Positions 4,039 through 64,000 of a stretch of DNA of 64,000 nt are shown in pieces. The first letter of the stretch is position 1. Every line of letters starts with the position of its first letter. A program made the translations under genes and the position numbers. The notes under the pieces were generated by a model. The model was not told the DNA's origin. It ran no database searches and saw only the letters and a list, made by a program, of their open reading frames with translations. This DNA comes from Octopus sinensis (taxonomy: Eukaryota): positions 78,988,001 to 79,052,000 of the forward strand of contig NC_042997.1 in NCBI RefSeq assembly GCF_006345805.1, read 5' to 3'.

Positions 4039-7000
4039 CCCTTTAGTGTTTAAACTGATCACATCCAGTCAAAATGTTCTACCTGTTTTATGTTCAAACT
4101 GGCCTCTCATACCAACACTACAATCATCATCATCATCATCATCATCGTTTAGCGTCTGCTTTCCATGCTAGCATGGGTTGGACGGTTCAACTGGAGTCTG
4201 GGAAGCCAGAAGGCTGCACCAGGCCCAGTTTGATCTGGCAATGTTTCTATGGCTGGATGCCCTTCCTAACGCCAACCACTCTATGAGTGTAGTGGGTGCT
4301 TTTTACGTGCCACTGGCATGGAGACCAGATGAAGCTGGCAACGGCCACGATCGGATAGTGCTTTTTATGTGCCAGGCGAGGCTGGCAACGGCCACGAACG
4401 GATGGTGCTTTTTACGTGCCACCGGCACAAGGCCAGTCGGGGTGGCGCTGGCAACGACCACGAACGGATGGTGCTTTTTACGTGCCACTGGCACGAGGCC
4501 AGTCAGAGCAGCGCTGGCAACAGCCACGTTCGGATGGTTTTCTTACGTGCCACCGGCATTGGTATCTCAGCTGCAATTTCCATTGATTGATTTCGATTCT
4601 GATTCTCACTTGCCTCAACAGGTCTTCACATGTAGAGTTTTGTGTTCCAAGAAGGGAAGGTATGCATAAGTGGACTGGCTACATCCCGTGTAGAAGGCCA
4701 CGGGTTAAGGTCTCACTTGTCCTGCCAGGTCTTCTCATGCACAGCATACTTCCAGAGGTCTTGGTCTCTAGTCATTTCCTCAGTGAGACCTAAAGTTCGA
4801 AGGTCGTGCTTCACCACCTCGTCCCAGGTTTTCCTGGGTCTGCCTCTTCCACAGGTTCCCTCAACCGCTAGGGTGTGGCACTTTTTCACACAACTATCTT
4901 CATCCATTCTCACCACATGTCCATACCAGCGCAAACATCTCTCTTGCACACCACATCTGATGCTTCTTAGGTCCAGCTTTTCTCTCAAGGTACTTACACT
5001 CTATCGAGTATGAACACTGACATTACACATCCATCGGAGCATACTGGCTTCATTTCTTGCGAGCTTACGCATATCCTCAGCAGTCACGGCCCATGTTTCA
5101 CTGCCATGTAGCATGGCTGTTTGTACACACGCGTCATACAGTCTGCCTTTTACTCTGAGTGAGAGGCCTTTTGTCACCAGCAGAGGTAAGAGCTCTCTGA
5201 ACTTTGCCCAAGCTATTCTTACTTTAGCAGTTACACTTTCAGCACACCCGCCCCCGCTGCTGACTTGGTCACCTAGGTAACGGAAGCTATCAACTATTTC
5301 TAGTTTTTCTGCCTGGAAAGTGACAGAAGTTGGTCTCAGAGCATTTTCAGTGTTTATTGTTCCTGAGCATCTGCCACATACAAAAACTATCTTCCTAGTT
5401 AGCTTTCCTTTGACATTGCTGCACCTCTTATGTGTCCATAGCTTACACTTGGTGCATCTTATAGAGTTTCTACCTACAACTTTTCTACAGATTGAGCAGG
5501 GCCATCTACCTGAAGGCGTTTGTGATTAGTTTACCTTCCTACTTATTTGGACTTTGGTTTTAGCTAGATTGATTCTACGGCCCTTCGATTCTAATCCTTG
5601 CTTCCACACCTGAAACTTCTCCTCTAGTTCTGATTGTGACTCAGCAATTAGAGCAAGGTCATCAGCATAGAGGAACTCCCAAGGGCATCCTGTCTTGAAT
5701 TCCTCCATTATTGCCTGGAGGACTATGATAAATAGGAGGGGGCTGAGGACTGAGCCTTGGTGGACCCCTACCTCTACCCAGAATTCTTCACTGTACTCGT
5801 TGCCAACCCGCACTTTACTAGCAGCGTCCCTGTACATGGCTCGCACAGCTCTCACTAACCATTCATCTATCCCTAGTTTCCTCATTGACCACCAGATAAG
5901 GGATCGGGGGGGACCCTGTCGAAGGCTTTCTCCATGTCAACAAAAGCCAGGTACAGGGGCTTATCTTTGGCTAGGTATTTCTCCTGCAGCTGCCTTACCA
6001 GGAATATAGCATCAGTGATACTTTTCCTTGGCACGAACCCAAACTGCATCTCATCTAAACTAACTCTCTCTCTAATTAGTTGGGCTATGACCCTCTCCGT
6101 AACCTTCATTACCTGATCCAACAGCTTGATACCTCTGTAATTATTTGTATCTAGGGTGTCACCTTTACCTTTGTAGCAGTTGACTATTATGCTGCTACAC
6201 CAGTCATTGGGTATGACTCCTTCGTATATCACCTGATTAACTATACGAGTGACTAGGCTATAGCCGACACTACCAGATATTTTGAGCATCTCTGCAGTGA
6301 TTCCTGATGGGCCTGGGGCTTTCCCTGTCTTCATGCTTCTAATTGCCTTAACTACCAAGGAACTGTCAACTCGTATAGCTGGTCCCTCTGTTGGGTCAAC
6401 ATTCGGCAGACTCTCTTTATCCCATTCATTTTCTTTATTCAGCAACCTTTCATAGTGGCGTCTCCAAACCTCTCTCTCTGCATCCTCATTAAGCGCAAGT
6501 GAACCATCTTCCATACGAACTTACTTCTCTCCTACCACATCACAATTCTCTCTCACACACTGTCTTGCAACACGAAACACCTCCAGTCTTTGGTCCTCAC
6601 GGCGCAGAACATTGGCAAATTTTTTCTTATCTGCTTCCCCTCTGGCTAGATAGACCTGTCTCCTAGCTTCCCTTTTGGCAGTCTGATACAATTCCATGCT
6701 ACCACCATTCTTCCAGTCCTTCCAAGTCTGTTTCTTTTCTCTAATAGCCCTGTCTACAACACTGTTCCACCACCACGTTACCTTGGGACGAGAGGGGACT
6801 TTGCACCAGCCACAGATCTGGTCAGTGGCTCTCAGCAGGTTGTCCCTTAGAAACGTCCAGTTACCTTCTACCCCATGTGATACTCTATCCCCTTCTACTT
6901 CATCAAAGGCTTCAAGTAGCATGTCCCTAAATCTCTGTCCATTCACAAGATCTTTAAGCTTCCAGATCCTTCTTCTCCATGTTGGTCGTCTTCTGGTTGT

Positions 7001-7372
7001 CCTCTTAGTCCTGATCCTAAAGTCACTAACTACCAGTCTATGTTGTGGGGTACATTCTTCGCCTGGGAAGGTTTTGGTATTTATAAGCAGCCATCTCTCC
7101 CTTTGCCTGGCAAGGATGTAGTCAATTTGGCTGGTATGTTGGCCCGATCGGTAGGTAATTAGGTGGCTTGTAGGTTTCCTGAAGTTAGTGTTGCAAATCA
7201 TAAGATTATTTGCATCACAGAACTCCAGTAGCCTGGTTCCCTCCTCGTTGCGCGTTCATAAAATAAACAGTCATACCATTGATATCTCAAAGCTACAAGA
7301 TAATGTGAAATAAATTCAAAACAATGTGAAGAAATAAACATTACACTTGATAGTAATCTGAATGCTAAAGGG
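4039..7372. mobile_element. piggyBac-type MITE (halves 4039-4123 and 7257-7372) interrupted by an RTE LINE
   Basis: TTAA|CCCTTTAG at 4035-4046 and CTAAAGGG|TTAA at 7365-7376: matching TIR ends with a TTAA target duplication. Confidence 0.75.
4124..7256 (-). mobile_element. RTE-clade LINE, 5'-truncated and frameshifted
   Basis: Minus-strand ORFs carry the APE C-terminus (SQIDYIL, HRLVVSDF) and RT motifs (KAPGPSG, FVDMEKAFDRV, GVHQGSVLSPLLF, LYADD, LRWYGHV). The 3' UTR has ~55-bp tandem repeats at ~4290-4560 and an (ATG)n tail, seen as (CAT)n at 4124-4146. Confidence 0.93.
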
Positions 7373-7540
7373 TTAATATACTGGATCATACATTATGGTT
7401 GCAAAATTAAATACTGTGTTATCGCTAGTTTAGTATGGTGTGGTCATCACTCCAGTAGTAGTTTTCTCTGTACAAAATGTTAATGCGGATGCAAGGTCAA
7501 GAATAATAAAGAAATCATTCTTAAACTTCACAAATAATTT

Positions 7541-7933
7541 CATCATCATCATCATCATTGTTTAACGTCCGTTTTCCATGCTAGCATGGGTTGGATGGTT
7601 CAACTGGGGTCTGGGAAGCCTGAAGGCTGCACCAGGCCCAGTCTTATCTGGCATTGTTTCTACAGCTGGATGCCCTTCCTAACGCCAACCACTCCGTGAG
7701 TGTAGTGGGTGCTTTTTACGTACCACCTGCACAGGTGCCAGATGAGGCTGGCAAACGGCCACGATCGGATGGTGCTTTTTACATGCCACTGGCACGGAGG
7801 CCAGTCGGGGCGGCGCTGGCAACGGCCACGTTCGGATGGCTCTCTTATGTGCCATCGGCACTGGTATCACAGCTACAATTTCCATTGATGTTGATCAATT
7901 TTGATTTTTGATTTTCTCTTGCCTCAATAGGTC
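7541..7933 (-). mobile_element. RTE 3'-end fragment or RTE-tail SINE-like copy
   Basis: Close similarity to 4124-4620, including the (CAT)n tail and the tgcca/tggca repeat units. Confidence 0.85.
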
Positions 7934-14963: not shown

Positions 14964-15696
14964 TGATATATATTTATATATATATATATATATATATCTG
15001 ATTGTCCTTATGTCTGTGTTTGTCCCCTACTACTGCTTGACAACCAGTTCTGGTATGTTTATACCCCTGTTACTTAGCAGTTCAGCAAAAGGGAACTGAT
15101 AGAATAAGCACCAGACTTTAAAAATAAAAGTATCGGGGGTGATTCATTCGACTAAAAATTCTTCAAGGCGAATCCCCAGCATGGCCGCAGTCTAATAACA
15201 AACAAATAAAAGATAGGTTACTGCTTAATCTCAGTGTTTTCCTATAGCCATTAGAGCATAACTATTAGATCAATGGTCCTGTACCTTAACCTCTCACGCT
15301 ATGAACAATGCACCATTAAAACTTTCAAATTTGTTATAAATCCTATGTTTGCCTATGTCTGATGATCTCTTAAGGCAGCTCCATGTGTATAATTTGGCCA
15401 AACTACTTTATAAATCTTTTTTGGACCAATAAGGAACTTTTAAAGAACTAAAGTGAAAAGAACTATCTTTACTTTTCAGTTTGGAACTTAAAAATGAAAT
15501 AATGGTAATATTTCTACACTTGAATTTTATTCAAAGTATTTACTTTAAAGTGAAAGTGAGTAGGTCTAACCAAAAATGAAGAAACAATTGTAGACAGAGT
15601 AAAATAATGTGTATAGACATATGAAAACAAATAGAATATTGTTTAAAAAATGTATTTTTATTATTTTTAATATAAATGTACATATTCTGTTTTCAG

Positions 15697-15827
15697 ATCT
15701 TACAAGCAATGGGTAAAGCTTACCATCCTGGTTGTTTCCGCTGTTGTCAGTGTAATGAATGTTTAGATGGTGTACCGTTTACAATTGATGTTGAAAACAA
15801 AATATATTGTGTTGCTGATTATCACAG
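15697..15827 (+). CDS. WTIP: LIM protein exon (LIM2)
   Basis: tttcag|ATC...CACAG|gtatat. 131 nt encoding [43 protein letters not shown] plus 2 nt; LIM zinc ligands intact. Confidence 0.96.
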
Positions 15828-15836
15828 GTATATTTA

Positions 15837-15867
<31 letters not shown>

Positions 15868-15925
15868 CTATATATATATATATATATATATAGGCTACTT
15901 TCAAGCCTTCGCCATAACTTGATTT

Positions 15926-16025
15926 NNNNNNNNNNNNNNNNNNNNNNNNNNNNNNNNNNNNNNNNNNNNNNNNNNNNNNNNNNNNNNNNNNNNNNNNNNN
16001 NNNNNNNNNNNNNNNNNNNNNNNNN
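15926..16025. other. Assembly gap (100 N) within intron 2
   Basis: Run of 100 N flanked by (TA)n tracts; the true distance is unknown. Confidence 0.99.
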
Positions 16026-16031
16026 TATATG

Positions 16032-16076
<45 letters not shown>

Positions 16077-16495
16077 GATAGGGTCTTAGTAAGTAGCCTA
16101 TCACCTTTTTCCGAGCACAGCCTCTTCCGCTCCCGTTTAATGCTCAGTAGGAATATTATAGTAGTAATAATGATATGAGAGCCAGTACAGTGACACATAA
16201 TCTCAGCTCCACCAGGGAGTACCCACTAGGGGTATAGTTTTATAAATAGTGGTGTTTGGTTGACAGTAACAATGGGAGTAGGGTAGAGAGCCCCAATAGC
16301 ATCCCCAGCATCATTTCCCGCAATAGCAGCACCACGGGCAGTAGCAATGACAGCACCCTGAGAGATGTGGAGAATCAGGGGTTATTCCTATAGTTTATAG
16401 TGACGTAGTGGAAAATAGAGTAGTAAGCGGCTGCAGGTCTCGGAACGAATATAGTGGACAGGAACGCAGTTCTAATTTCAGAAACTAATCCTAGC

Positions 16496-19239: not shown

Positions 19240-19298
<59 letters not shown>

Positions 19299-19301
<3 letters not shown>

Positions 19302-20580
19302 TCATCGTTTAACATCCACTATCCATGCTGGCATGGGTTGTGTAGTTTGACTCAGGACTGGTGAGCCAGAGGCTGCACCAGGGTCAGTCTGATCTGGCAA
19401 AGTTTCTACAGCTGTGTCCTTGGCAACGATCATACTCGGATATGCTTCTTTTAACGTTCCACTGGCATGAGTGCCAATCAGGCGGTACTGTCAGCAACCA
19501 CGTCAGCAATTTTGATTCATTTACACTTGCCTCAATAGGTCTTCACAAGCAAAGTTCATTGCTCAATGAATAAGGGATGCTCATAAGTGGGCTGGTTACA
19601 CTCCACTTTCAAATGTGCTTTTAATGTTCCACTGGCACGAGTGCCAATCAGGCGGTTCTGTCGTTGGCCACACCAGCAATTCTGATTTTGATTTCACTTG
19701 CCTCAATAGGTCTTCACAAGCAAGGTTTGTTGTCCAATGAATGAGGGGTGTTCATAAATGGGCTGGTTACACTCACTGGCATAGGCCATGGGCTATGGCC
19801 TCACTTGGCTTGTCAGGTCTTCTCAAGCACAGCATATCTCCAAAGGTCTCAGTCACTAGTCATTGCCTCGGTATGGCCCAATGTTTGAAGGTCGTGCTTC
19901 ACTACCTCATCCCAGATTTTCCTGGGTCTACCTCTTCCACAGGTTCCCTCAACTGCTAGGGTGTGACACTTTTTCACACAGCTATCCTCATTCATTCGCA
20001 ACACATGACCATACCAGCGCAATCATCTCTCTTGCACACCACACCTGATGCTTCTTAGATCCAACTTTTCTCTCAGGGCACTTACACTCTGTTGTGTATG
20101 CACACTGACATTACGGAGCATACTGGCTTCATACCTTGCAAGCTTATGCATGTCCTCAGTAGTCACGGTCCATGTTTCGCTGCCATGTAGCATGGCAGTT
20201 TGCACACATGTCATACAGTCTATCTTTTACTCTGAGCAAGAGGCCCTTTGTCACCAGCAGAGGTAAGAGCTCTCTGAATTTTGCCCAGGCTATTCTTATT
20301 TTCGCAGCTACCCTTTCAGAGCATCCACCCCTGCTACTGACTTGGTCGGCTAGGTAACAGAAGCTATCAACTACATTTAGTTTTTCTCCCTGGAATGAGG
20401 CGGAAGCTGTTCTCTGCACATTTTCTTTGTTTATAGCATCTGAGCATTTGCCACATACAAAAACTATCTTCCCAGTTAGCCTCCCTTTGATATTGTTGCA
20501 CCTCTTATGTGTCCATAGCTTACACTGGGTTCATCTTATGGAGTTTCTACCTATGCCTTTTCTAAAGATTGAGCAGGGCC
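19299..20580 (-). mobile_element. RTE LINE, 5'-truncated
   Basis: LNVVDSFCYL, AWAKFRELLPLL, MLHGSETW, LDLRSIRCGVQER; (CAT)n tail at 19299; ~170-bp internal duplication (19440-19600 / 19610-19770). Confidence 0.88.
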
Positions 20581-20599
20581 ATATATATATATATATATA

Positions 20600-29611: not shown

Positions 29612-30079
29612 GATTGTGGTATGCAACTTACAGATGAACCTGATAAGCGATGCTATCCATACCAGAATACATTGCTCTGCCGAGATTGTCACATAAAACG
29701 CCTCAATGCCCGCTATCCCGATGAGCAGTTTTGCATTGATCCTGTTACTCAGCTTATTAAAACTATAAATAGTGAAAACTCTAAAGTGGATTCTCCAGGT
29801 GGCTCTTTTGGTGGAACTGTTGGAGATTTTGCTCCTGCCACAATCAGTGTTCTTACAGCTCCACGTATGAATACGCCGGCTGGTTATCGTGGCTCATATT
29901 GCAGCAATAGTACTGTAGGAGATGCAAATGGTGCTAACACTAATACTCACAATTTTAGCTCTGGCCAAGAACAGTATTTGCTATCAAACAATTATCAATC
30001 ATCACAAAGACCATATGATCAAAAAGCACCTTCGTCTCCTGTAAAATCTTCAATGAAATACCAAATTACAGAACTTTGA
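29612..30079 (+). CDS. WTIP: LIM protein terminal coding exon (end of LIM3 plus long C-terminal tail)
   Basis: ttacag|GAT TGT GGT ATG. Encodes DCGMQLTDEPDKRCYPYQNTLLCRDCHIKRL...MKYQITEL*, 155 aa, ending in TGA. Confidence 0.95.
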   Translation, partial: DCGMQLTDEPDKRCYPYQNTLLCRDCHIKRLNARYPDEQFCIDPVTQLIKTINSENSKVDSPGGSFGGTVGDFAPATISVLTAPRMNTPAGYRGSYCSNSTVGDANGANTNTHNFSSGQEQYLLSNNYQSSQRPYDQKAPSSPVKSSMKYQITEL

Positions 30080-44689: not shown

Positions 44690-45350
44690 GAAGGAAAAAT
44701 TGTATAATGCATGTGTATGAACTGCGATGCTGCATGGTAGTGAGATGTGGGCCCTGAATGCAGAGGTCATGTAATGGTTAGAAAGGAATGAAGCTGGTAT
44801 GCTCTACTAGATGTGTGATAGAGCATTGGTGTACTGAGGGAGAGGCTGGGAATAAGAGGAATTATATGCAGTGTGCAAGAGAGAAGACTGCACTGGTTTG
44901 GTCATGTGAAGCATATGGATGAGGACAGTTACATAAAGAAGTGCTGATCACTTAGTGGAGGTAAGTTGTGGAAAAGGGAGACTCAAGAAGACATAGGATG
45001 AAGTTTTGAAGGCCGATCTCAAAACGCTGAACTTTGCAAAGGAGATGACAAAGAACTGAGATAATTGAGGTCCTAAAACCAAGATGCTACATTAAAGTGT
45101 TGGTGTGGGTGCTGGTGCCATGTAAAAAGGACTGGTGCTGGTAGCACTTAAAAAGCAATAGTGATGATGCTACATAAAAAGCACTCAGTATACTGTGGAG
45201 TGGTTGGCATTAGGAAGGGTATCCAGCCAAAGAAACCAAGTCAAGACAGACTATAGAATCTGGTGCAGCCTCTGGCTTTACCAGTTCCTGTCAAGCTGTC
45301 CAACCCATGTCAGCATGGAAAATGGACATTCAATGTTGATGACGATGATT
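41800..45350 (+). mobile_element. Near-full-length, heavily decayed RTE LINE
   Basis: APE (NVGIMKGRSGEIVEML, GGVGILL, SQIDYIL) and RT (FVDLEKAF, LLFIIVLQA, LYVDD-like, LHWFGHV) with many stops; (GAT)n tail at ~45338; (CT)n expansion at 44650-44686. Confidence 0.85.
42757..42975. mobile_element. piggyBac-type MITE inserted in the RTE LINE
   Basis: TTAA|CCCCTTGCAGA...TCTGCAAAGGG|TTAA. Removing it restores the RTE reading RDVL-NEAF. Confidence 0.8.
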
Positions 45351-46426
45351 ATTCATAACCATGCTGTGTTGCATGCTTGACTTATTTTGATGGCTTAGAT
45401 ACAATTATGCCACAGCAGTTACACTGTCAGACATCTACATTACCCTAGGAGGATATATCTTGTTTTTATGTTTTATTGTGTAGAATAATCAAAGCTTTGA
45501 AGGCACTTCAAAACCAGTCAGATAATTACAGTTGATGTTCAGTTTGAAAATTTGTATATCAAGGACTTCAAGAGAGAAATTTCAATTGCCTGACATTATG
45601 GAAGAGAGGAAAGTGGGGTAGAGAGTAGGATTAATATAAGGAAAGAGATGGGGGTGGCAGTTAAAAAGAATTGGGTTAGCACCTGACAAATTAAGTAGAG
45701 GCTGTTGTAGAATTGATTGAATAGGTCGAATGAGAAAGCAATGTAACTGTAGGCCAGAGGTTATAGTGAGTTGATGCGAGGGCCTTTGCTAATCAAGTGG
45801 ATGGTATGCAGACTTAAGTATTTCCCCAGAGAAGAATACTAGAATTTATGGTTGCCTTTTGAAGATTTAAAAAGAATTGCAATGTTCTCTATGTTACGAA
45901 ATTATAATAAAATGGATTGGACCATTGAGAATTCAGTGCTGCTACCATGGGTAAAGAGCAACAACAACTGACTGCAGCCAACATCATTGAATTAGGCAAC
46001 ATTAACCCATGGAGAAACATAAAAATGGCCAACTTTATAAGGCCACTCAGGTAACCAGTATTTTCTGGATTAAAAAAAATCTTAAGAATTGAGTTTTTGA
46101 GAATGAGAAAGAATACTGACCATAAACAAGATTAGAGTAATAAAAAAAAGTCAGCAGTCAAAAATGTCACATGCAACTTAGAAATCTATTGCTTCAGATA
46201 TACTATAACTGCACTTGGATGAGAACCATGCAATATGTTGAAACATGCAGCTATGAATTTGCAAGAAGTACATTCTGTTCTCCACTGTTTTGTATGCTTG
46301 TACATTACATTGCAGAATCTTGTGCATGTGTGTATTGAGAGATAAAGAGATACAAGCTAGATACCAAACTGATCCTTTTGATTAATTTAATAATTTTCAG
46401 CCTTGTGAACTTTCAAACCTCTAGAG

Positions 46427-56898: not shown

Positions 56899-57000
56899 GT
56901 GGACATATGGCGTAGTGGTTAAGAGCGTGGGCTACTAACCTCTCAAGATTCTGAGTTCGATTCCAGGCAGTGACCTGAATAATAATAATAATAATAATAA
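56899..57000 (+). mobile_element. tRNA-derived SINE head ending in (AAT)n
   Basis: Pol III A box TGGCGTAGTGG (56908-56918) and B box GTTCGATTCC (56955-56964). No acceptor-stem closure, so not an intact tRNA. Confidence 0.75.
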
Positions 57001-60000
57001 CACCGGGGGATGTTTAACAGAGAGAACACTGGGGGACGTTTAACAGAGAACACCGGGGGACATTTAACATGTGAGAGCGATAAAACAGTGCTCCGAAATC
57101 TATCCACAAACATCGGAAATAAAGACATTGCATGGAGCCAAAAAATAGCTGACAAAGGATTGGACTATATCCGAGTAAGTAATACTCATTGAAATTTATT
57201 ACTATTTTCCAAATGAAATGATGTATTTTAACTCCAAAGCACATGTAAACATGCTTGATACATTACGATCTAACAACACCAGACCATCTCCAACCCCAAA
57301 CACCATGTACAAATAAATTAAATAATACCAGTATTATTCAACCCAAGAATAACAATTGGGAAGTGCATACTTTCAACTTGTTACACAAAAAGTATGAAAA
57401 ACTACGCGTGCAGAACAATGTGACAACAGAAATGAATGGACCGGTACCCTATGAAAATGATGACTGTCAAAACAAAGGGCCAGACGTTGTTCCTCATGTC
57501 CCGCAAATAGAACCAAAAAGGCATAAATGGACACGTGAGGAATATATTTCAATCCTACATGCTTATTTAACAACTGAAGAGGTCACCCAGGCACTGCAAA
57601 GACTAAGCAACTGGAAGGCACCTGGGCACAACAAGATCCCCAAAGAGCAAAAACACAACAACATATTCATATAAAATATGGAAGAAAAATAACATAAATA
57701 AAGACTTGGATACAGCAATGAACCCTAATAAACTAGTTAACATATGAAGATATATTCTCAATGCAAAAAAATATCACAAATAGAAATAGAACATTTAAAA
57801 GAAAAAATACATCAGGAAAATGTAGAGAGAAGCCACACAACAATGCCAAATAATATAAACACTGAAATAGTAAAACACAAAGACAAACGTAACATTTCCA
57901 ACAAAAACGAAGTAAACAAAAGCCAACAAAACCAGACCATATGAAAAGCAGCAAACCAATACACGACAGACAAACATACGAATAAGAAAGAAAGCGACAC
58001 AAATCTAAAACCTGGAAACAACGAAGGGGAGCCTAATGATTATGATACTATAAAAAGTAGAATAATCAAAGAACTGAAAACCACAGATCTCAGAATGGAC
58101 CACCGACCATACCTCCTAAAAATCAAAATAGACAAAAAAACAACATCAATAATAAATAGCATGAACCTAGCCATCACGGAACTAATAGCCACTGAAACAA
58201 ATAGCGATGTCACTGAGCTAAATGACATAGTATATGCAGCAGCCACAAAAGAAGCTGGATACTCACTCAAACCCATCCAAACAGGAGTACCATCACCCTA
58301 ACAAACCCTGTGGATAAATAACATCCCCCCCAAAAATACAAAAAATGAGAAAAGATTTACCTGAGATAAAAGAAAAGCTAAAGCAAGATATCCTTGCCAA
58401 AGCACAAAGGATCCACTGGTATGAGAAACGCCAACGTTTCTTTGAACAAAAAGTTCTACTTGGAAAAAATAAAATAGACATCACTGCAGCACCAATGGCA
58501 GAAGAAGTGGAAGAATTTTGGAAAGAAATATGGTCGGCAAATGAACAACCACAGAAAAGGAGCATTAAAACAACAAACTTAGCATCTGAGCAACTCTAGA
58601 CCCCCATAACAACTGAAGAGGTCACCCAGGCACTGCAAAAACTAAGCAACTGGAAGGCACCTGGACATGACAAGATCCCCAACTTCTGGTTGAAATATCT
58701 GACAGGAATGCACAAAATGCTGGCTGAAAATTTTAACAACATACTGGCAGAGCCAGAGACAATGCCTGAATGGCTCACGAAAGGGAAAACCATCTTAATT
58801 CCCAAATCCAATGAAACGGCAAAACCAGAAAACTACAGACCTATAACCTGTCTCCCTACTATGTACAAAGCCTTTACTGCAGTAATATCGCAAAGATTGA
58901 ACAAGCACCTGGACGAAAACAACCTGTTTCCAGAAGAGCAGAAAGGATGCCGCAAGGGCTCATATGACTGTAAAGATCAACTAATGATCAATAAAGCCAT
59001 AACTGAAGACAGCCGCAGAAAGAAGAAAGGCCTCAGTATGGCCTGGATCGACTACTGAAAGGCATTTGATAGCATTCCCCACAAGTGGATCCTTGAAACA
59101 CTAGCCATTAACAAGGTAGCACCAACAATTATAAAATACATAGGACACTCTATGAATAAATGGCAGACAGTGCTACAGCTCCAAACAAAAGAGGGACTCG
59201 TGAAAACCAAAGCCATCCCCATTAGAAGAAGAATATTCCAGGGAGACACGCTCTCTCCACTCCTTTTCTGCTTGGCACTGACACCTCTATCTGATATGCT
59301 AAATAGAACTGGATGCGGATACAAATGTTACGGCAAAATGGTCAGCCACCTTTTATATATGGATGACCTAAAACTATACGCCACAAATGACAAACAGCTG
59401 GAAACACTACTAAAGACAGTTCATGGATTTACCAAAGAAATAGATATGAAATTTGGATTAGAAAAATGCGCCAAGTAACCATGAAAAGAGGAAAACTAGT
59501 TAAGAGTAGCAACATCACACTAGATAAAACCAATGAAATAAGAGAATTAGACCAAAGCCAAACTTACAAATATTTAGGGATCCATGAACTAGATAAGATA
59601 CAACACACACAAATGAAAGAGAAAATAAAAAAAAGAATATTATAGACGAGTTAGATCAATACTAAAAATAGAGCTCAATGTTAAAAACAAGATAGTAGGT
59701 ATTAAAACTTTAGCTGTCCCAGTTATAAGTTACAGCTACAATATCCTTAATTGGACACTAAATGAACTGACCAAAATAGATAGGAAAACAAGAAAAATAA
59801 TGACAGGCTCTAAGATGCATCACCCAAAATCTGACATAGAAAGGCTATATATGCAACGTATAGAAGGTGGTAGAGGCCTTATACAGCTGGAAGACTATTA
59901 TAAAATAACCACCATAGGACTGCAAAAAATATCTACTTCAGAAGCAGGGAAAACTGATACAAATAGCAGCAAAACAAAAAAACTGTTCTCATTATTTAAG

Positions 60001-61090
60001 GAAGCTGACAAGAAATCATACCACCTAACAAATATGAAGAAGAAGAAGAAGAAGAAGAAGAAGAAGAAGAAGAAGAAGAAGAAGAAGAAGAAGAAGAAAC
60101 AACAAAAGCTATAAAACAAGTGAAATCCAAACTAAAACTAGAACAGCAACGGACCATGATAAAACGATGGCAAGAAAAGCCCCTTCATGGCAAATACTGG
60201 ACTAAACTAAATGCAAAAGAAATAGACAAAGAAAAATCCCAGCAATGGTTGAGAAGCTCAGGACTCAAAGCAGAGACAGAGGGATTTTTAATTGCAGCAC
60301 AAGACCAAAGCCTCCCAACCAGAAATTACCAAAAACATATAATGAAAAGGAATATAACAAGTAACTGCAGAATATGTGGAGATAGACAAGAAACAATAAA
60401 TCATATCATCTCTGGCTGCCCAGTCCTGGCTAAGAAGGAATACATTCACAGACACGATAGAGTTGAGACCTTCATACACTGGAAGCTATGCCAACATTAT
60501 GGAATAACAACAGAAAGAAGATGGTATAGGCACATCCCAGAAAAGGTCACAGAAAACGAGAAAACAACCATACTCTGGGATATGCCAATACACACAGATA
60601 GAGAAATTAAGGCCAACAGACCAGATATAGTTGTCAGAGATCATGAAGAAAAAAAATGCTTTCTAATTGATGTATCAATACCAGCAGATGACAACGTGTC
60701 TCTAAAAGAAAAGGAGAAACTTTCAAAATACAAAGACCTGGAAATAGAGACAACTCGAATGTGGAATCTAAAAACAGAAACAATTCCTATCATTGTAGGT
60801 GTATTAGGCATGATAAAAAAATATTCAGACAAATATATAACAGAAACACCAGGACTTACAAACACATATAACATACAGAAAGTTGCACTACTGGCCACTG
60901 CCCACATCCTATGCAAAACACTTTCAATACAGTAACCATCAGAGCATCACAACAAAACACAGCACATACCCAAGGCACACAGAGCTGCGCTCGGTAGTGA
61001 AGTGGAAGCACGATATAAAAAAAAAAACTACTGAATTAGGCGGTACCATAGCCAATGAGGGTTATCCGAGGCGTGGTTATTGCTAGTTGA
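57001..61090 (+). mobile_element. R4/Dong-clade non-LTR retrotransposon (RT plus restriction-like endonuclease), disrupted
   Basis: N-terminal KRHKWTREEY; RT (WKAPG, YRPITCLPTMYK, EEQKGC, AWIDY, IFQGDTLSPLLF, HLLYMDDLKLY); CCHC CRICGDRQETINHIISGC, RHD, RPDIV, IDVSIP, EKLSKYKDL. (AAT)n on both flanks. Confidence 0.92.
60036..60098 (+). repeat. (GAA)21 microsatellite inside the LINE ORF
   Basis: Perfect GAA run, 63 bp. Confidence 0.97.
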
Positions 61091-61118
61091 AATAATAATA
61101 ATAATAATAATAATAATA

Positions 61119-61295
61119 GCAGCAAACATTGAAAACTACCTTAGGAATGAGAACCCAGGTTCGAAATTTCCCCAAGACACCTGATGAAAGCTGGAGAGTA
61201 TATCAGTCAAAACGTTGTGTTAACAACAAACAAGAGGACAAATATCCGTCAAATGTAAATAATGTACATAATTCCTCATCACTTAAATATAGAAC
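61119..61295 (+). mobile_element. Repeat tail with a mutated minimal hammerhead motif
   Basis: GACAC-CTGATGA-A-AGCTG...CAGTC-AAAA-CGT-T-GTGTT. Stem I GACAC/GTGTT and the palindromic ACGT stem III are intact, but the GAAA core reads AAAA. Confidence 0.6.
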
Positions 61296-61361: not shown

Positions 61362-61493
61362 ATTTATTATATAGAAGGAGCTTCTACAGGACTAGAACTG
61401 TTTCATTCAAGAGAAATCTTCAGGAAGCTTCCTGAAGATTTCTCTTGAATGAAACAGTTCTAGTCCTGTAGAAGCTCCTTCTATATAATAAAT
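61362..61493. repeat. Perfect spacerless 132-bp palindrome
   Basis: Base-by-base symmetry about 61427/61428 (centre AAGCTT). Confidence 0.97.
61426..61476 (+). ncRNA. Type I hammerhead ribozyme motif (mirrored on the - strand at 61379-61429)
   Basis: Stem I AGCTTC/GAAGCT, core CTGAAGA, stem II TTC-TCTT-GAA with a U.U closing mismatch, GAAA, stem III ACAG/CTGT, GUA cleavage triplet (A61470). Confidence 0.7.
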
Positions 61494-61595: not shown

Positions 61596-62647
61596 TGTGT
61601 GAGTGTATTTGTGTTCCCCCCCCCACCCCGCCTGTCATCGCTAGATAACCGATGTTGGTGTATTTATGTCTCCATAACTTAGTGGTTCGGCAAAAGAGAA
61701 TGATAGAATAAGTACTAGGCTTACAAAGAATAAGTCCTGGGGTCAATTTGTTCGACTAAAGGTGGAGCTCCAGCATGGCCACAGTCAAGTGACTGAAACA
61801 AATAAAATAATAAAACTTCTAAAATGAGACTTCATCCATGTGTATCCGTGTGCGTTTATGTGCAGGCATGTGTGTGTGTGTGGTGGGGATGCTGGTGTGC
61901 AAGAAAAACATTCACGGAAATGTACTCATAAAATTTCTATTATAAGTTATCTTTATATGCCACGTTTGCAATTCTCCATATAAAAAATAACTAAGTGTGT
62001 ACTAAATGAAATAAAATCTTGGTTCAATGACAGATCGATCAAGTTATTAAAGTTTTAACGTTGTTGGTAACAATATATTCTCTCTTTTAATTGAAAATTG
62101 AAAAAGAGAGAAAATGTGAGGGGAATATATTTTGGTGGTAATGACTAAACCCTTTGTGCCATTATCACAATTACAAAGCATTTCAGAAGTGTAACATTGT
62201 GCAAGTTCATTTCTGTAAATGTTTTTCTTGCCCACCCCCCTGCACATATACACATGTGGATACACATGGACGAAGTCCCATTTTGGAAGTATGTTAAAGT
62301 TTTTATTATTTTGGAATGAAGAACACAAACATAGGTGCTGAGTCAGTGACTAAATTTGTATTTTGTTAGGATTAATCCAATGAATTGACAGCAAGGTAAT
62401 TGCTGCCATCAGAATCGTTTACTTTTAAGGTGAAAAAACAAAACTGACATACACGACAGATATGTAAAATATATTTCTATGTACTTCTTTCTCTGTTCAT
62501 GTGGATAAACTGCAGAAATTGTTGCCTGCACGCACACACAAACACAAAAATTCTCCAGGTGTTTAGCTGTTATTTTTATCATATCGAGTTTTATTACATA
62601 ACAGAAGTGCTTATTTTCATTTCACTTAGCAACAATTATTATTATTT

Positions 62648-62756
62648 TCATCAACTCAAGATCTACGTGACTTAAGGTGAGCCTGATCACTGAAAATTTT
62701 GGGGTCTTGCAATTTGTTATTGTTTGGTGAGCCATGTTGTAAATTCAAGGTGATGA
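62648..62756 (+). ncRNA. Candidate structured RNA A1 (three-way junction, two GG-UGAG-CC loops)
   Basis: Folded by eye. P1 TCATCA/TGATGA; P2 CTCAAGAT/ATTTTGGG plus GTGA/TCAC plus AGG-TGAG-CCT; P3 CTTG/CAAG, AATTT/AAATT, TGG-TGAG-CCA. Paralog at 63862. Confidence 0.5.
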
Positions 62757-62830
62757 TTATATTGTAGTTGTTCCTTGTTATGAAATTAATACATTTTTTG
62801 CTTATAAAAATGCATATAATTTATTAATTA

Positions 62831-63190
62831 CTAGCACTATGACCCGGCAATGCCGGGTCATAATGCTAGTGCATGCATATACAGCTACGTGCGCACATAC
62901 ATGTGAGTACTGGCCAAATCTCCGACCAATCACATACAGCTAGCTGGCATTCAATTGGTGTATCAAGTTTCGGGCATTTTGATTGAGTTTTGGATAGAAA
63001 ATTCACAAAAATGTCACTTCTATTGATTTTTTAATGACTTTGTTGGGTGACTGGGGAAATGTAAAGATGTGCACGACCACCCTTGGACGGTTTTGAATGA
63101 CCATAGAAAGTGCGAGCCCTCTAACTGAGAAATTGTGGATTTGTATAAAGGACACACACGCAGACATTTTGCCATTTATATATAGAGAGA
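62831..63190 (-). mobile_element. 360-bp non-autonomous Helitron-type element
   Basis: On the - strand: 5' TC, 3' CTAG, inserted between A and T, with a subterminal hairpin TATGACCCGGCA-T-TGCCGGGTCATA. Confidence 0.75.
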
Positions 63191-63270
63191 TTGCAAGAAA
63201 ATAAATTTGAATAAAAAAAATAACTTTATTTTCTTTAAAAAAATTCCAAATTCGCTTGATAGAATATAGA

Positions 63271-63700
63271 CATTTCTGGCTGTGTCTCTGTGGGCAGTAC
63301 TGAAGTCATGTAGTAAAGCTGTTCAGAAAAGGCATTGGTTAAAAGTGCTTATGTTCTGCAACTTATTTTTTAACTTTAATATTTAATTAATAAAGTTATT
63401 TTTAATATGCTATTGCACTTAAGTAATTTTAACTTTTATTATTAATTTTCTCTTTCAGCCTTACTGCTTTTTTTTTTTTTTTTGCTAATTTCTTTTTAGT
63501 TGCTTTCCTTTTGCTTTTTAGCTAATTATTTAATCAGGCTAGTTCATTAATGTGTTATATGCTTCAGATATACACATCTAATTTTATTGGGGAAAGAATA
63601 AAGTCATTTTTGGCTGTGTCTCTATGTGCAGACCTGAAGGCATGTAGTAAGGCTGTCCAGAAAAGGCATTGTTATAAAGTGATTATATTCTAAACTTATT
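63271..63700 (+). repeat. Two diverged ~97-bp direct repeats B1 (63271-63367) and B2 (63605-63700), each hairpin-forming
   Basis: Shared GGCTGTGTCTCT, CTGAAG, CATGTAGTAA.GCTGT.CAGAAAAGGCATTG; outer stems TTTCTGG/TCAGAAA and TTTTTGG/CCAGAAA. Confidence 0.65.
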
Positions 63701-63861
63701 ATTTAATAGCGAAATAAAAATTAAAGGGATTTTCATATATCTACTTTTGTATTATGGGAATGTAGGTAATTTTCACTTGTGTAAATCTGATATGCTTTCA
63801 TAATTACTGTTGTAATGAATCATTATTGATAGATCTAGATCAGCAGCAGTCATTGCTATTA

Positions 63862-63971
63862 TCACCAACTCAAAATCTAGGTTACTTAAGGTGAGCCTGG
63901 TAACTGGTGGTTTTGGGGTCTTGTTGTTTGTAACTGATTGGTGAGCCAAAGTGTAACCTTCAAGATGGTAA
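63862..63971 (+). ncRNA. Candidate structured RNA A2 (paralog of A1)
   Basis: P1 TCACCA/TGGTAA; P2 CTCAAAATC/GGTTTTGGG plus GTTAC/GTAAC plus AGG-TGAG-CCT; P3 CTTG/CAAG, GTT/AAC, TTGG-TGAG-CCAA. Confidence 0.5.
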
Positions 63972-64000
63972 AATTCTCTGCCATTAATTTGGTGTGGATA

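What the first reader, a model, noticed from the sequence alone, without database searches (positions are those of the whole stretch)
62648..63971. Duplicated three-way-junction RNA candidate with covariation and twin GG-UGAG-CC loops
A1 (62648-62756) and A2 (63862-63971) differ at many positions yet keep the same fold. Compensatory swaps occur in all three helices: P1 U-A to C-G, P2 G-C to U-A, P3 A-U to G-C. Several G.U-consistent changes favour the + strand as RNA. Both apical loops in both copies are UGAG closed by two G-C pairs, and the junction UUUUGGGGUCUUG is invariant. Established parallels: UGAG in apical loops is the CAB box of Cajal-body H/ACA RNAs, though no H or ACA box is present here; AAG|GUGAG is a consensus 5' splice site; and A1 has an Sm-site-like AAUUUUGG (62695-62702; A2 has GGUUUUGG), a layout reminiscent of spliced-leader or snRNA-like RNAs. 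I match it to no known family. With only two sequences the covariation is suggestive, not statistical.
Basis: partly seen in the sequence, partly recalled or inferred. Interest (0 to 1): 0.8.

Follow-up and report, generated by a model that had tools for sequence, protein, structure and literature searches.

The report
Duplicated 129-base foldable repeat unit
Two diverged copies of a 129-base unit keep a common Y-shaped fold slightly better than chance, but it looks more like a small mobile-element relic in transposon-rich DNA than a spliced-leader or snRNA-like gene, and the sequence at hand cannot settle it.

Summary
There are two same-strand copies (62628-62756 and 63842-63971), 78% identical, with sharp edges and unrelated flanks. 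Each carries two GGTGAGCC motifs and an invariant TTTTGGGGTCTTG. A 32-pair Y-shaped fold is 98% satisfied in both copies, with two clean compensatory pairs, three G.U-type changes and one break. Tested against random placement of the same substitutions, p runs from 0.0016 to 0.30 depending on strand and test. None of 35 other duplicated segments in the window did as well. Single-sequence stability is unremarkable.

No Rfam family matches. There is no third copy in 64 kb, and no relative in the metagenome, viral or protein collections.

The SL/snRNA and CAB-box readings fail several defining tests. A2 lacks the Sm adenine. The supposed free junction is base-paired in the best common fold. No H or ACA box is present, no upstream element is shared, and the copies are not near-identical.

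The region is transposon-rich. On the minus strand the unit ends in UGAA-(AAT)4, the same junction as the 3' end of the neighbouring (AAT)n-tailed LINE.

My best guess (0.42) is a retroposed, SINE-like structured unit. A lineage-specific structured RNA gene pair remains possible (about 0.2). Interest is modest.

The parts
62628..62756 (.). Copy A1 of the repeat unit. It consists of a 20-nt AT-rich edge (62628-62647, containing (ATT)4 at 62635-62646) and a 109-nt foldable body (62648-62756).
   Evidence: Pairwise alignment, blastn and nhmmer. The flanks on both sides are unrelated to those of A2.
63842..63971 (.). Copy A2 of the repeat unit. It has the same orientation as A1, lies 1214 bp downstream, and ends 29 nt before the end of the window.
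   Evidence: covariance model scores of 129 bits for each copy.
62676..62683 (+). First GGTGAGCC of A1, at the apex of hairpin P2. On the plus strand it reads AAG|GUGAGC, a strong 5' splice-site match with the GU at 62677-62678. An AG at 62628-62629 lies 47 nt upstream. The A2 equivalent is 63890-63897, with its AG at 63842-63843.
62726..62733 (+). Second GGTGAGCC of A1, at the apex of hairpin P3 (UUG|GUGAGC). The A2 equivalent is 63940-63947.
62697..62709 (+). Invariant TTTTGGGGTCTTG (A2: 63911-63923). In the common fold it is base-paired: 62696-62703 pairs with 62655-62662 (H1), and 62705-62709 pairs with 62746-62750 (H2).
62695..62702 (+). Sm-site-like AAUUUUGG, found in A1 only. A2 has GGUUUUGG at 63909-63916.
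62648..62653 (+). 5' strand of the terminal stem P1, pairing with 62751-62756. One compensatory pair changes U-A to C-G. One pair is broken in A2 (C.A).
   Evidence: helix 1.
62667..62690 (+). Hairpin P2. 62667-62670 pairs with 62687-62690, and 62675-62677 pairs with 62682-62684, leaving a UGAG loop. One compensatory pair changes G-C to U-A.
   Evidence: helices 3 and 4.
62714..62742 (+). Hairpin P3. 62714-62716 pairs with 62740-62742, and 62725-62727 pairs with 62732-62734, leaving a UGAG loop. The middle of this arm is not conserved between the copies.
   Evidence: helices 6 and 7.
62635..62650 (-). Read on the minus strand, this is UGAA followed by (AAT)4 at the 3' end of the 109-nt body. 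The junction matches the 3' end of the neighbouring LINE, the LINE/U4 chimera and the tRNA-like element at 56908-56998. It is degenerate in A2 (GGTGATAATAGCAATGAC).

Best explanation
A1 and A2 are two old copies of a small non-autonomous retroelement, either SINE-like or a retro-copied small RNA. Its sense strand is the minus strand of the window.

On that strand the unit is a 109-nt body that folds as a Y: a terminal stem joins its 5' and 3' ends, and two short hairpins are capped by GG-CUCA-CC. The body is followed by UGAA-(AAU)n. That is the 3' junction used by the (AAT)n-tailed non-LTR retrotransposon whose copy ends 1.5 kb upstream, and that element would supply the reverse transcriptase.

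On this reading the compensatory differences between the copies were inherited from source RNAs that diverged under selection for the fold. The copies here are inert. The plus-strand motifs (the 5' splice-site look-alikes and the Sm-like run in A1) are by-products of the complementary strand.

Shown: the two copies, their sharp edges, the shared fold, the tail junction and the transposon-rich context. Inferred: retroposition, the sense strand, the partner LINE and the inertness of these copies.
For: - The unit has sharp edges and all four flanks are unrelated. This implies the unit itself was copied, or that it alone was conserved.
- The window has only three (AAT)n runs of four or more units. 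Two are the 3' ends of retroelements: the LINE at 61091-61117 and the tRNA-like element with perfect A and B boxes at 56908-56998. The third abuts the minus-strand 3' end of A1 through the same UGAA junction.
- This LINE's reverse transcriptase demonstrably picks up small RNAs. Its copy here carries a 53-nt U4 snRNA fragment exactly between ...ACTACTGAA and (AAT)n, and two other copies of the LINE 3' end lack that fragment.
- The surroundings from 57 to 62.3 kb are LINE, tRNA-like pieces, palindromes and a foldback element.
- Read as the minus strand, the consensus fold stands out most from shuffles: z=-4.3, structure conservation index 0.82, p=0.003-0.014.
- No Rfam family matches and the two copies share no upstream promoter-like element.
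Octopus vulgaris is reported as 66% repeats and 11.6% SINEs, in about 900 mostly unclassified SINE families, with Dong-R4 LINEs the most active (PMC13282606).
Against: - Only two copies were found, 1.2 kb apart, and there is no third in 64 kb even with a covariance model run without filters. Adjacency is unlikely for a low-copy dispersed family.
- A high-copy family should have left open-reading-frame relatives in the protein collections, which do hold relatives of the neighbouring LINE. None were found.
- No tRNA-type A or B box is present on either strand.
- I could find no target-site duplications by inspecting the flanks.
- The 20-nt tail region aligns between the copies without gaps, and the alignment runs past the (AAT)n. 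That is unusual for tails that grew independently.
- A1 read on the minus strand contains an internal T4, which would stop Pol III.
- The three one-sided changes in helices H1 and H2 are G.U-compatible only on the plus strand.
- There is no significant similarity to the LINE 3' UTR or to the tRNA-like element.
Confidence: 0.42

Rival explanations
1. A1 and A2 are tandem paralogues of a lineage-specific structured small RNA transcribed from the plus strand. It folds as a Y with two arms, each displaying a U1-complementary G|GUGAGC at its tip. It would act as an Sm-class-like RNA or a mimic of the 5' splice site.
For: - A same-orientation pair 1.2 kb apart is the usual layout of small-RNA gene clusters.
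- The substitutions preserve a 32-pair fold, with 63 of 64 cells paired against 30-49% in the slid controls. There are two compensatory and three G.U-type changes.
- Threading the A1 Y-fold onto A2 gives p=0.0016.
- This pair is the best of the 36 duplicated pairs tested in this window.
- The longest invariant runs of the alignment lie at the hairpin tips and in the 13-mer between the two arms.
Against: - The unbiased plus-strand tests are weak: p=0.07-0.30.
- The minimum free energy is not below that of shuffles.
- The two copies share no upstream element.
- An internal UUUU in both copies argues against Pol III.
- A2 lacks the Sm adenine.
- No relatives exist in any accessible collection.
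- Small-RNA genes are far rarer than transposon fragments in such DNA.
Confidence: 0.2
2. A1 and A2 are spliced-leader RNA genes. A 47-nt or shorter leader ending in ...ACUUAAG would be donated in trans from the GU at 62677 or 63891, with an Sm site between the stem-loops.
For: - A1 passes the in-silico plausibility filters used for SL RNA genes. These are WWG|GU, an AU4-6G motif about 19 nt after the donor, flanking inverted repeats, and a Y-shaped fold about 127 nt long (criteria from PMC7986045, and PMC3795323).
- The dimensions resemble Hydra SL-B, which has a 46-nt leader in a 107-nt RNA.
Against: - A2 fails the Sm motif.
- The leader differs at 10 of 47 positions between the copies, whereas SL genes are normally near-identical multi-copy arrays, often linked to 5S genes.
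- The Sm run is paired in the common fold.
- No promoter element is shared.
- The Rfam SL and SmY models are silent.
- To my knowledge, SL trans-splicing has not been demonstrated in molluscs. Annelids lack it.
Confidence: 0.03
3. The unit is a duplicated 47-nt exon plus 80 nt of downstream intron from an unannotated plus-strand transcript. The hairpin holding the 5' splice site at its tip, with a second decoy site 50 nt downstream, would regulate splice-site use or serve as an editing duplex.
For: - Homology begins 2 nt before an AG in both copies, with that AG included in the homologous block, and a strong AAG|GTGAGC follows exactly 47 nt after it in both copies.
- A1 has a good polypyrimidine tract upstream.
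- One plus-strand frame is open across the 47 nt.
- An exon-intron hairpin containing the 5' splice site has precedents, by my own knowledge: tau exon 10 and the GluA2 R/G site.
Against: - The A2 acceptor lacks a pyrimidine tract and has three AGs just upstream.
- The changes split 4 synonymous to 6 non-synonymous, which gives no coding signal (my count).
- The intron part is as conserved as the exon.
- No protein relatives were found, though a 16-residue peptide is too short to be decisive.
- The nearest recognisable gene ends 32 kb upstream.
Confidence: 0.1
4. A1 and A2 are a neutral DNA-level relic, for example the terminal direct repeats of a decayed LTR-like or composite element, or remnants of an old duplication. 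The apparent covariation would be chance.
For: - Direct repeats about 1.1 kb apart, with unrelated inner and outer flanks, are the signature of terminal direct repeats.
- A second duplicated block (63258-63373 and 63592-63706) is nested between them.
- The unbiased p values reach only 0.02-0.14.
Against: - I saw no TG...CA termini, primer-binding site, polypurine tract or target-site duplication in either orientation when reading.
- Seven of the eight substitutions in paired columns keep the pairing.
- None of the 35 control windows reached the p value of this pair.
Confidence: 0.15

Closest known systems
SINEs and retro-copied small RNAs mobilised by microsatellite-tailed non-LTR retrotransposons (Dong/R4-type, (TAA)n-associated)
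   Same: The unit is short, about 110-130 nt, with sharp edges. Its body is a structured RNA and its 3' end is UGAA-(AAT)n, identical in kind to that of the LINE next door. The region is transposon-rich, and the same LINE copy has captured a U4 fragment.
   Different: There is no recognisable Pol III A or B box and no target-site duplication. Only two copies are seen, and they are adjacent. The tail region aligns between the copies without gaps.
Spliced-leader RNAs (for example Hydra SL-B, nematode SL1)
   Same: The overall size is similar. WWG|GU sits at a hairpin, A1 has an AU4G run about 19 nt downstream, and the predicted fold is Y-shaped.
   Different: The Sm motif is lost in A2 and is paired in the common fold. 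The copies are 22% diverged and do not form an array. No promoter element is shared. There is no evidence of leader use, and the phylum is not known to trans-splice.
H/ACA scaRNAs with CAB boxes (UGAG in both apical loops)
   Same: There are two hairpins, each with UGAG in its terminal loop.
   Different: No H box (ANANNA) lies in a single-stranded hinge and no ACA lies 3 nt from a 3' end. The hairpins are 47-49 nt, shorter than pseudouridylation-pocket hairpins usually are (by my own knowledge; I did not look for a pocket), and the two ends pair with each other.
Regulatory hairpins that sequester a 5' splice site (tau exon 10 type)
   Same: The 5' splice-site nucleotides from -2 to +8 form the tip of a conserved hairpin at an exon-like/intron-like boundary.
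   Different: No transcript or gene is known here. The unit is duplicated with a poor acceptor in A2, and conservation does not extend into any upstream intron.

Membership tests
Spliced-leader RNA | Splice donor GU immediately after a leader ending in WWG | tested here: met
   UUAAG|GU is present in both copies, at 62676/62677 and 63890/63891.
Spliced-leader RNA | Sm-binding motif (AU4-6G) downstream of the donor, single-stranded between stem-loops | tested here: not met
   A1 has AAUUUUGG 19 nt after the donor, but A2 has GGUUUUGG. In the fold common to both copies the run is paired with CUCAAGAU.
Spliced-leader RNA | Multi-copy, near-identical tandem genes, often linked to 5S rRNA genes | tested here: not met
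   There are two copies at 78% identity, with 10 of 47 differences in the would-be leader. Rfam finds no 5S gene in the window, and the spacers are unrelated. The sequence beyond 64000 was not seen.
Spliced-leader RNA | Leader found on the 5' ends of many mRNAs, with a TMG cap and Sm proteins | not testable with these tools
   No transcriptome of the source species is accessible. The six-frame peptide search cannot detect a 9-16-residue tag.
Sm-class snRNA gene | Match to a known snRNA covariance model | tested here: not met
   Rfam found no hit at E up to 10 over 62400-64000 for any snRNA, SL or SmY model.
Sm-class snRNA gene | Conserved proximal sequence element upstream | tested here: inconclusive
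   The 500 nt upstream of the two copies share nothing above shuffle level: score 23 against a null of 24.3 +/- 2.9. The element is unknown for this taxon, and a short one could be missed.
H/ACA scaRNA (CAB box) | UGAG in the terminal loop(s) | tested here: met
   All four hairpin tips read GG-UGAG-CC.
H/ACA scaRNA (CAB box) | H box ANANNA in the hinge and ACA 3 nt from the 3' end | tested here: not met
   On the plus strand neither copy has ANANNA in the hinge, and neither has ACA downstream of the second hairpin.
SINE | Internal Pol III promoter in a head derived from tRNA, 7SL, 5S or snRNA | tested here: not met
   No conserved A or B box was found within 2 mismatches on either strand. The tRNA-like element at 56908 served as a positive control and scored 0 and 1 mismatches. 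Rfam found no tRNA, 7SL or 5S hit, and ARAGORN found nothing.
SINE | 3' end matching that of a partner LINE | tested here: inconclusive
   The UGAA-(AAT)n junction is shared with the LINE 3' end. Similarity to the LINE 3' UTR proper is not significant, p=0.07-0.17.
SINE | Many dispersed copies flanked by target-site duplications | tested here: inconclusive
   Only two adjacent copies occur in 64 kb, none in 20 kb of a distant relative, and no open-reading-frame relatives were found. I saw no target-site duplication by eye. The genome-wide copy number could not be tested.
MITE | Terminal inverted repeats of 10 bp or more at the edges of the unit, plus a target-site duplication | tested here: not met
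   Only 6 bp are perfectly inverted (TCATCA/TGATGA), and 9 of 14 beyond that. Homology extends 20 nt outside the left arm.
LTR/TRIM terminal direct repeats | TG...CA termini, a primer-binding site after the 5' repeat, a polypurine tract before the 3' repeat, and a 4-6 bp target-site duplication | tested here: not met
   I recognised none of these in either orientation when reading the flanks. At 22% divergence this absence is weak evidence.
Hammerhead or other self-cleaving three-way-junction ribozymes | CUGANGA and GAAA core, or a match to an Rfam ribozyme model | tested here: not met
   Neither copy has CUGANGA. Rfam found no ribozyme hit at E up to 10.

The most novel reading that the evidence does not exclude
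The two units are genes for a mollusc-lineage Sm-class, spliced-leader-like RNA. A1 is functional and A2 is degenerating. The GU at 62677 would donate a leader ending in ...ACUUAAG in trans. This would be the first evidence of SL-type trans-splicing machinery in Mollusca.
Probability: 0.03. Interest if true: 0.85.

Novelty: new member of a known kind. Interest (0 to 1): 0.27.

Why it matters
If it is a retroposed unit, it is ordinary: one more unclassified short retroelement in a repeat-rich genome. Its minor interest would be as an example of a structured RNA body whose fold is traceable through compensatory changes between copies.

If instead it is a locus-specific RNA gene pair, it would define a new small-RNA family whose two arms each present a mimic of the U1-binding 5' splice site. 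That would be worth a Northern blot and an Sm/TMG immunoprecipitation.

The two readings can be separated by one BLAST of the 129-nt unit against the source genome. The value of this report is to show that the attractive SL/snRNA reading fails several defining tests. It also gives a calibrated measure of how strong the covariation really is: the best of 36 duplicated pairs in the window, but p only about 0.002-0.1.

Tried and rejected
- Rfam at gathering threshold over the whole window, and at E up to 10 over 62400-64000. Nothing relevant turned up; the MIR5272 and snoMe28S hits are noise.
- Pattern scans of metagenome contigs (two) and viral contigs (one). The first metagenome scan and the viral scan found nothing; the second found three actinobacterial CRISPR arrays and one tandem repeat, all chance matches.
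- A trick to recover DNA homologues through called ORFs. I searched a concatenated six-frame translation of both copies against 5.8 billion proteins, with nothing at E up to 1. A profile of the open minus-strand frame against 1.84 billion representatives returned one bacterial repeat protein, a chance hit.
- Exact look-ups of five ORFs overlapping the units, and of the LINE ORF. None are on record, so the source genome is not in the collection as called ORFs.
- Attempts to identify the organism or extend the locus:
  - The LIM exon has one hit, at 60% identity, in ENA assembly ERZ21867824. Its non-coding DNA does not align with the window.
  - The LINE relatives come from SRR7158634 (90%) and GCA_024449705.1 (77%).
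- None of these accessions appears in the literature library and none carries a source name.
- nhmmer and a covariance-model search with filters off, looking for a third copy in the window and in L007. None was found.
- Similarity of the unit to the neighbouring tRNA-like element and to the LINE 3' UTR. This was marginal and inconsistent between the copies, p=0.04-0.9.
- Protein-coding exon on the minus strand. The frame is open for 37-58 codons, but there is no splice donor at the edge, no Pfam match and no homologue.
- Ideas considered on reading and dropped for lack of defining features: parvovirus-like Y-shaped terminal hairpin, hammerhead or retrozyme, mirtron or mini-intron (62677-62749), Y RNA or vault RNA, C/D snoRNA (the GUGAUGA is in A1 only), U5-like 3' domain, U12 branch-site mimic.
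- Literature string search for the invariant motifs. It returned only unrelated primers.
Full report
**What is there.** Reading 62000-64000 and aligning the two stretches confirms two same-strand copies of one unit.
Homology actually starts 20 nt earlier, at 62628 and 63842, and runs about 126-129 nt at 78% identity.
- Within the 110-column body there are 23 substitutions (13 transitions, 10 transversions) and one indel.
- The edges are sharp. The 500 nt upstream of the two copies share nothing above shuffle level (score 23 against a null of 24.3 +/- 2.9). The 29 nt visible after A2 do not resemble the sequence after A1. A low-stringency self-comparison of 62000-64000 finds only this pair and one other nested pair.
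- GGTGAGCC occurs five times in 64 kb, against 0.57 expected. Four of these are the twin motifs of A1 and A2.
- TTTTGGGGTCTTG and ACTTAAGGTGAGCCTG are each exact in both copies and occur nowhere else.
- blastn with word size 7, nhmmer --max and a covariance model run without filters all fail to find a third copy in the window.

**Is the fold more than chance?** Taken singly, no. The z-scores against dinucleotide shuffles are -0.24 and -1.32 on the plus strand and -1.69 and -0.19 on the minus strand.

Taken jointly, modestly yes.
- RNAalifold consensus energy against column-shuffled alignments gives z=-4.3 (0 of 500) and a structure conservation index of 0.82 when read as the minus strand. Read as the plus strand it gives z=-1.4 and an index of 0.59. 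The difference is largely that G/U-rich shuffles fold well anyway.
- I held one copy fixed and placed the same number of transitions and transversions at random. The real partner then preserves the consensus fold better than 99.7% and 98.6% of mutants (minus reading) and 91% and 70% (plus reading).
- As a calibration I ran the same test on 35 other 110-column windows taken from duplicated (mostly transposon) segments of this window. None gave p at or below 0.02, and the neighbouring D3 pair gave 0.37 and 0.62.
- Threading the structure of one copy onto the other gives p between 0.0016 and 0.14, depending on how the structure was chosen.
- On a 32-pair Y-shaped structure, 63 of 64 cells are paired, against 30-49% for slid controls. 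There are two pairs changed on both sides (columns 4/107 and 22/41), three changed on one side through G.U (13/51, 15/49, 58/104) and one broken (2/109).

The verdict is that the covariation is suggestive. It is the best among 36 duplicated pairs here, but it is not proof.

**What the common fold looks like.** Forcing the two GG/CC tip pairs gives, for A2, a structure as good as its minimum free energy (-29.8 kcal/mol). For A1 the forced structure is 3.3 kcal/mol above the minimum. The structure has three parts:
- a terminal stem P1;
- an arm in which CUCAAGAU pairs with AUUUUGGG and encloses hairpin P2;
- an arm in which UCUUG pairs with CAAG(G/A) and encloses hairpin P3.

On the minus strand those G.U-dependent helices are impossible. 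The ends then form a longer terminal stem, and the middle stays open.

The strand is therefore unresolved. The G.U-type changes favour plus. The statistics and the tail described below favour minus.

- *Rfam.* No hit at the gathering threshold, and none for any snRNA, SL, SmY, snoRNA, tRNA, 7SL or ribozyme model at E up to 10.
- *CAB box.* UGAG is in all four loops, but no H box lies in a hinge and no ACA lies downstream.
- *Spliced leader.* A1 passes the usual in-silico filters. These are WWG|GU, AU4G about 19 nt downstream, flanking stems and a Y shape. The criteria come from PMC7986045 and PMC3795323. Against this:
  - A2 lacks the Sm adenine.
  - The would-be 47-nt leader differs at 10 positions between the copies.
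  - There is no array of near-identical genes, no 5S linkage and no shared upstream element.
  - Use of the leader on mRNAs could not be tested.
- *Exon reading.* In both copies homology starts 2 nt before an AG, with that AG included in the homologous block, and the strong donor follows exactly 47 nt after it. One frame is open. However, the A2 acceptor has no pyrimidine tract, the changes split 4 synonymous to 6 non-synonymous, and the 80 intron-like bases are as conserved as the exon-like ones.

**Context.**
- The only Rfam hit in the window is U4 at 61025-61147, and it is not a gene. It lies inside the 3' end of a non-LTR retrotransposon with ORFs at 57255-60935 carrying RVT_1 and zf-RVT domains.
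- Aligning that 3' end with two other copies (L001, L002) shows the canonical end ...ACTACTGAA(C)-(AAT)n. The window copy has 53 nt of U4 (about nt 13-65) inserted exactly at that junction. This is a template-switch chimera.
- The window contains only three (AAT)n runs of four or more units. One is this LINE tail. One follows a tRNA-like element with perfect A and B boxes at 56908-56998. The third abuts the minus-strand 3' end of A1, and in all three cases the run is preceded by TGAA.
- The stretch from 61.1 to 62.3 kb holds tRNA-like debris, a 132-nt perfect palindrome and a foldback element.
- If the source is an octopod, published repeat annotation reports 66% repeats, about 900 mostly unclassified SINE families and highly active Dong-R4 LINEs (PMC13282606).

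**Weighing the explanations.**
- The sharp edges and unrelated flanks leave two possibilities. Either the unit itself was copied, by transposition or retroposition, or it alone has been conserved since an old tandem duplication.
- Transposon fragments outnumber small-RNA genes by orders of magnitude in such DNA, and the tail junction is a specific positive sign. I therefore put a retroposed, SINE-like structured unit first, at 0.42.
- That reading is uncomfortable on several counts:
  - There are only two copies, and they are adjacent.
  - There is no A or B box and no target-site duplication.
  - The tail region aligns without gaps.
  - There are no open-reading-frame relatives in collections that do contain relatives of the LINE.
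- A plus-strand structured RNA gene pair explains the adjacency and the G.U pattern better. It has no promoter, no family and no external support, and I give it 0.20, with SL RNA proper a further 0.03.
- A duplicated exon-intron module gets 0.10. A neutral relic with chance covariation gets 0.15.

**Limits.**
- The source genome and close relatives could not be reached. The metagenome and viral scans returned only chance CRISPR matches. Exact ORF look-ups failed. The one related contig is too distant for non-coding alignment.
- The organism remains unidentified.
- A2 ends 29 nt before the end of the window, so whether the pair is the start of an array is unknown.

Noticed in passing
window 61025-61147 (+), within the LINE 3' end at 60936-61117: The only Rfam gathering-level hit, U4 snRNA at 51 bits, is not a gene. 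About 53 nt of U4 (roughly nt 13-65, covering the 5' stem-loop and stem I region) sit exactly between the LINE's ...ACTACTGAA and its (AAT)n tail. Two other copies of the LINE 3' end lack this insert. This is a LINE/U4 chimera, presumably formed by reverse-transcriptase template switching at UGAA microhomology.
   Followed up: yes
window 56978-61117 (+): A degenerate non-LTR retrotransposon carries RVT_1 and zf-RVT domains in ORFs at 57255-57674, 58690-59058 and 60120-60935. It appears bracketed by (AAT)7 at 56978-56998 and (AAT)9 at 61091-61117. That is reminiscent of Dong/R4-type elements, which insert into (TAA)n repeats. The closest relatives are 90% identical (Logan SRR7158634) and 77% identical (GCA_024449705.1).
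   Followed up: partly
window 56908-56998 (+): A tRNA-derived SINE-like element has a perfect A box (TGGCGTAGTGG) and a near-perfect B box (AGTTCGATTCC). It is followed by (AAT)7 and then three tandem copies of about 25 nt (aacaccgggggatgtttaacagaga). Neither ARAGORN nor Rfam calls it a tRNA.
   Followed up: partly
window 63258-63373 and 63592-63706 (+): A second isolated duplicated block (D3), 116 nt long and 84% identical, lies 334 bp apart and is nested between A1 and A2. It shows no sign of structure conservation (p=0.37 and 0.62) and has no Rfam hit.
   Followed up: partly
window 61362-61493: A perfect 132-nt palindrome, with 66-nt arms and no spacer, is flanked by (TA)n/(CA)n microsatellites.
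   Followed up: no
window 61804-62312: A foldback-type element has inverted arms that are 82-88% complementary: 61804-61825 with 62291-62312, 61815-61866 with 62239-62290, and 61894-61926 with 62204-62236. It lies about 300 bp upstream of A1.
   Followed up: no
window 62830-62870: A 41-nt near-perfect hairpin palindrome (ACTAGCACTATGACCCGGCA A TGCCGGGTCATAATGCTAGT) lies 75 nt downstream of A1. It attracts spurious plant-miRNA Rfam hits.
   Followed up: no
window 15676-15840 and 29621-30079 (+): These are exons of a LIM-domain gene. The Pfam LIM match has E=2.9e-10, and the last exon ends ...KYQITEL*. The last exon has a single relative in 5.8 billion proteins, at 60% identity, so the lineage is poorly sampled. 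A gap of 100 N lies inside 15676-16198.
   Followed up: partly
window 4127-7933, 19298-20585, 45168-45352: Several copies of another repeat family occur here, including ...ccatgctggcatgggttg...ggtgagccagaggctgcaccag.... A second reverse-transcriptase-bearing element lies on the minus strand at 5526-7201. The fifth GGTGAGCC of the window, at 19360, belongs to this repeat and not to an A-like unit.
   Followed up: partly
loci L003-L005 (metagenome contigs): The degenerate architecture pattern hit high-GC CRISPR arrays with the repeat ...GTCGTCCCCACGCACGTGGGGGTGAGCCG. These are unrelated chance matches.
   Followed up: yes
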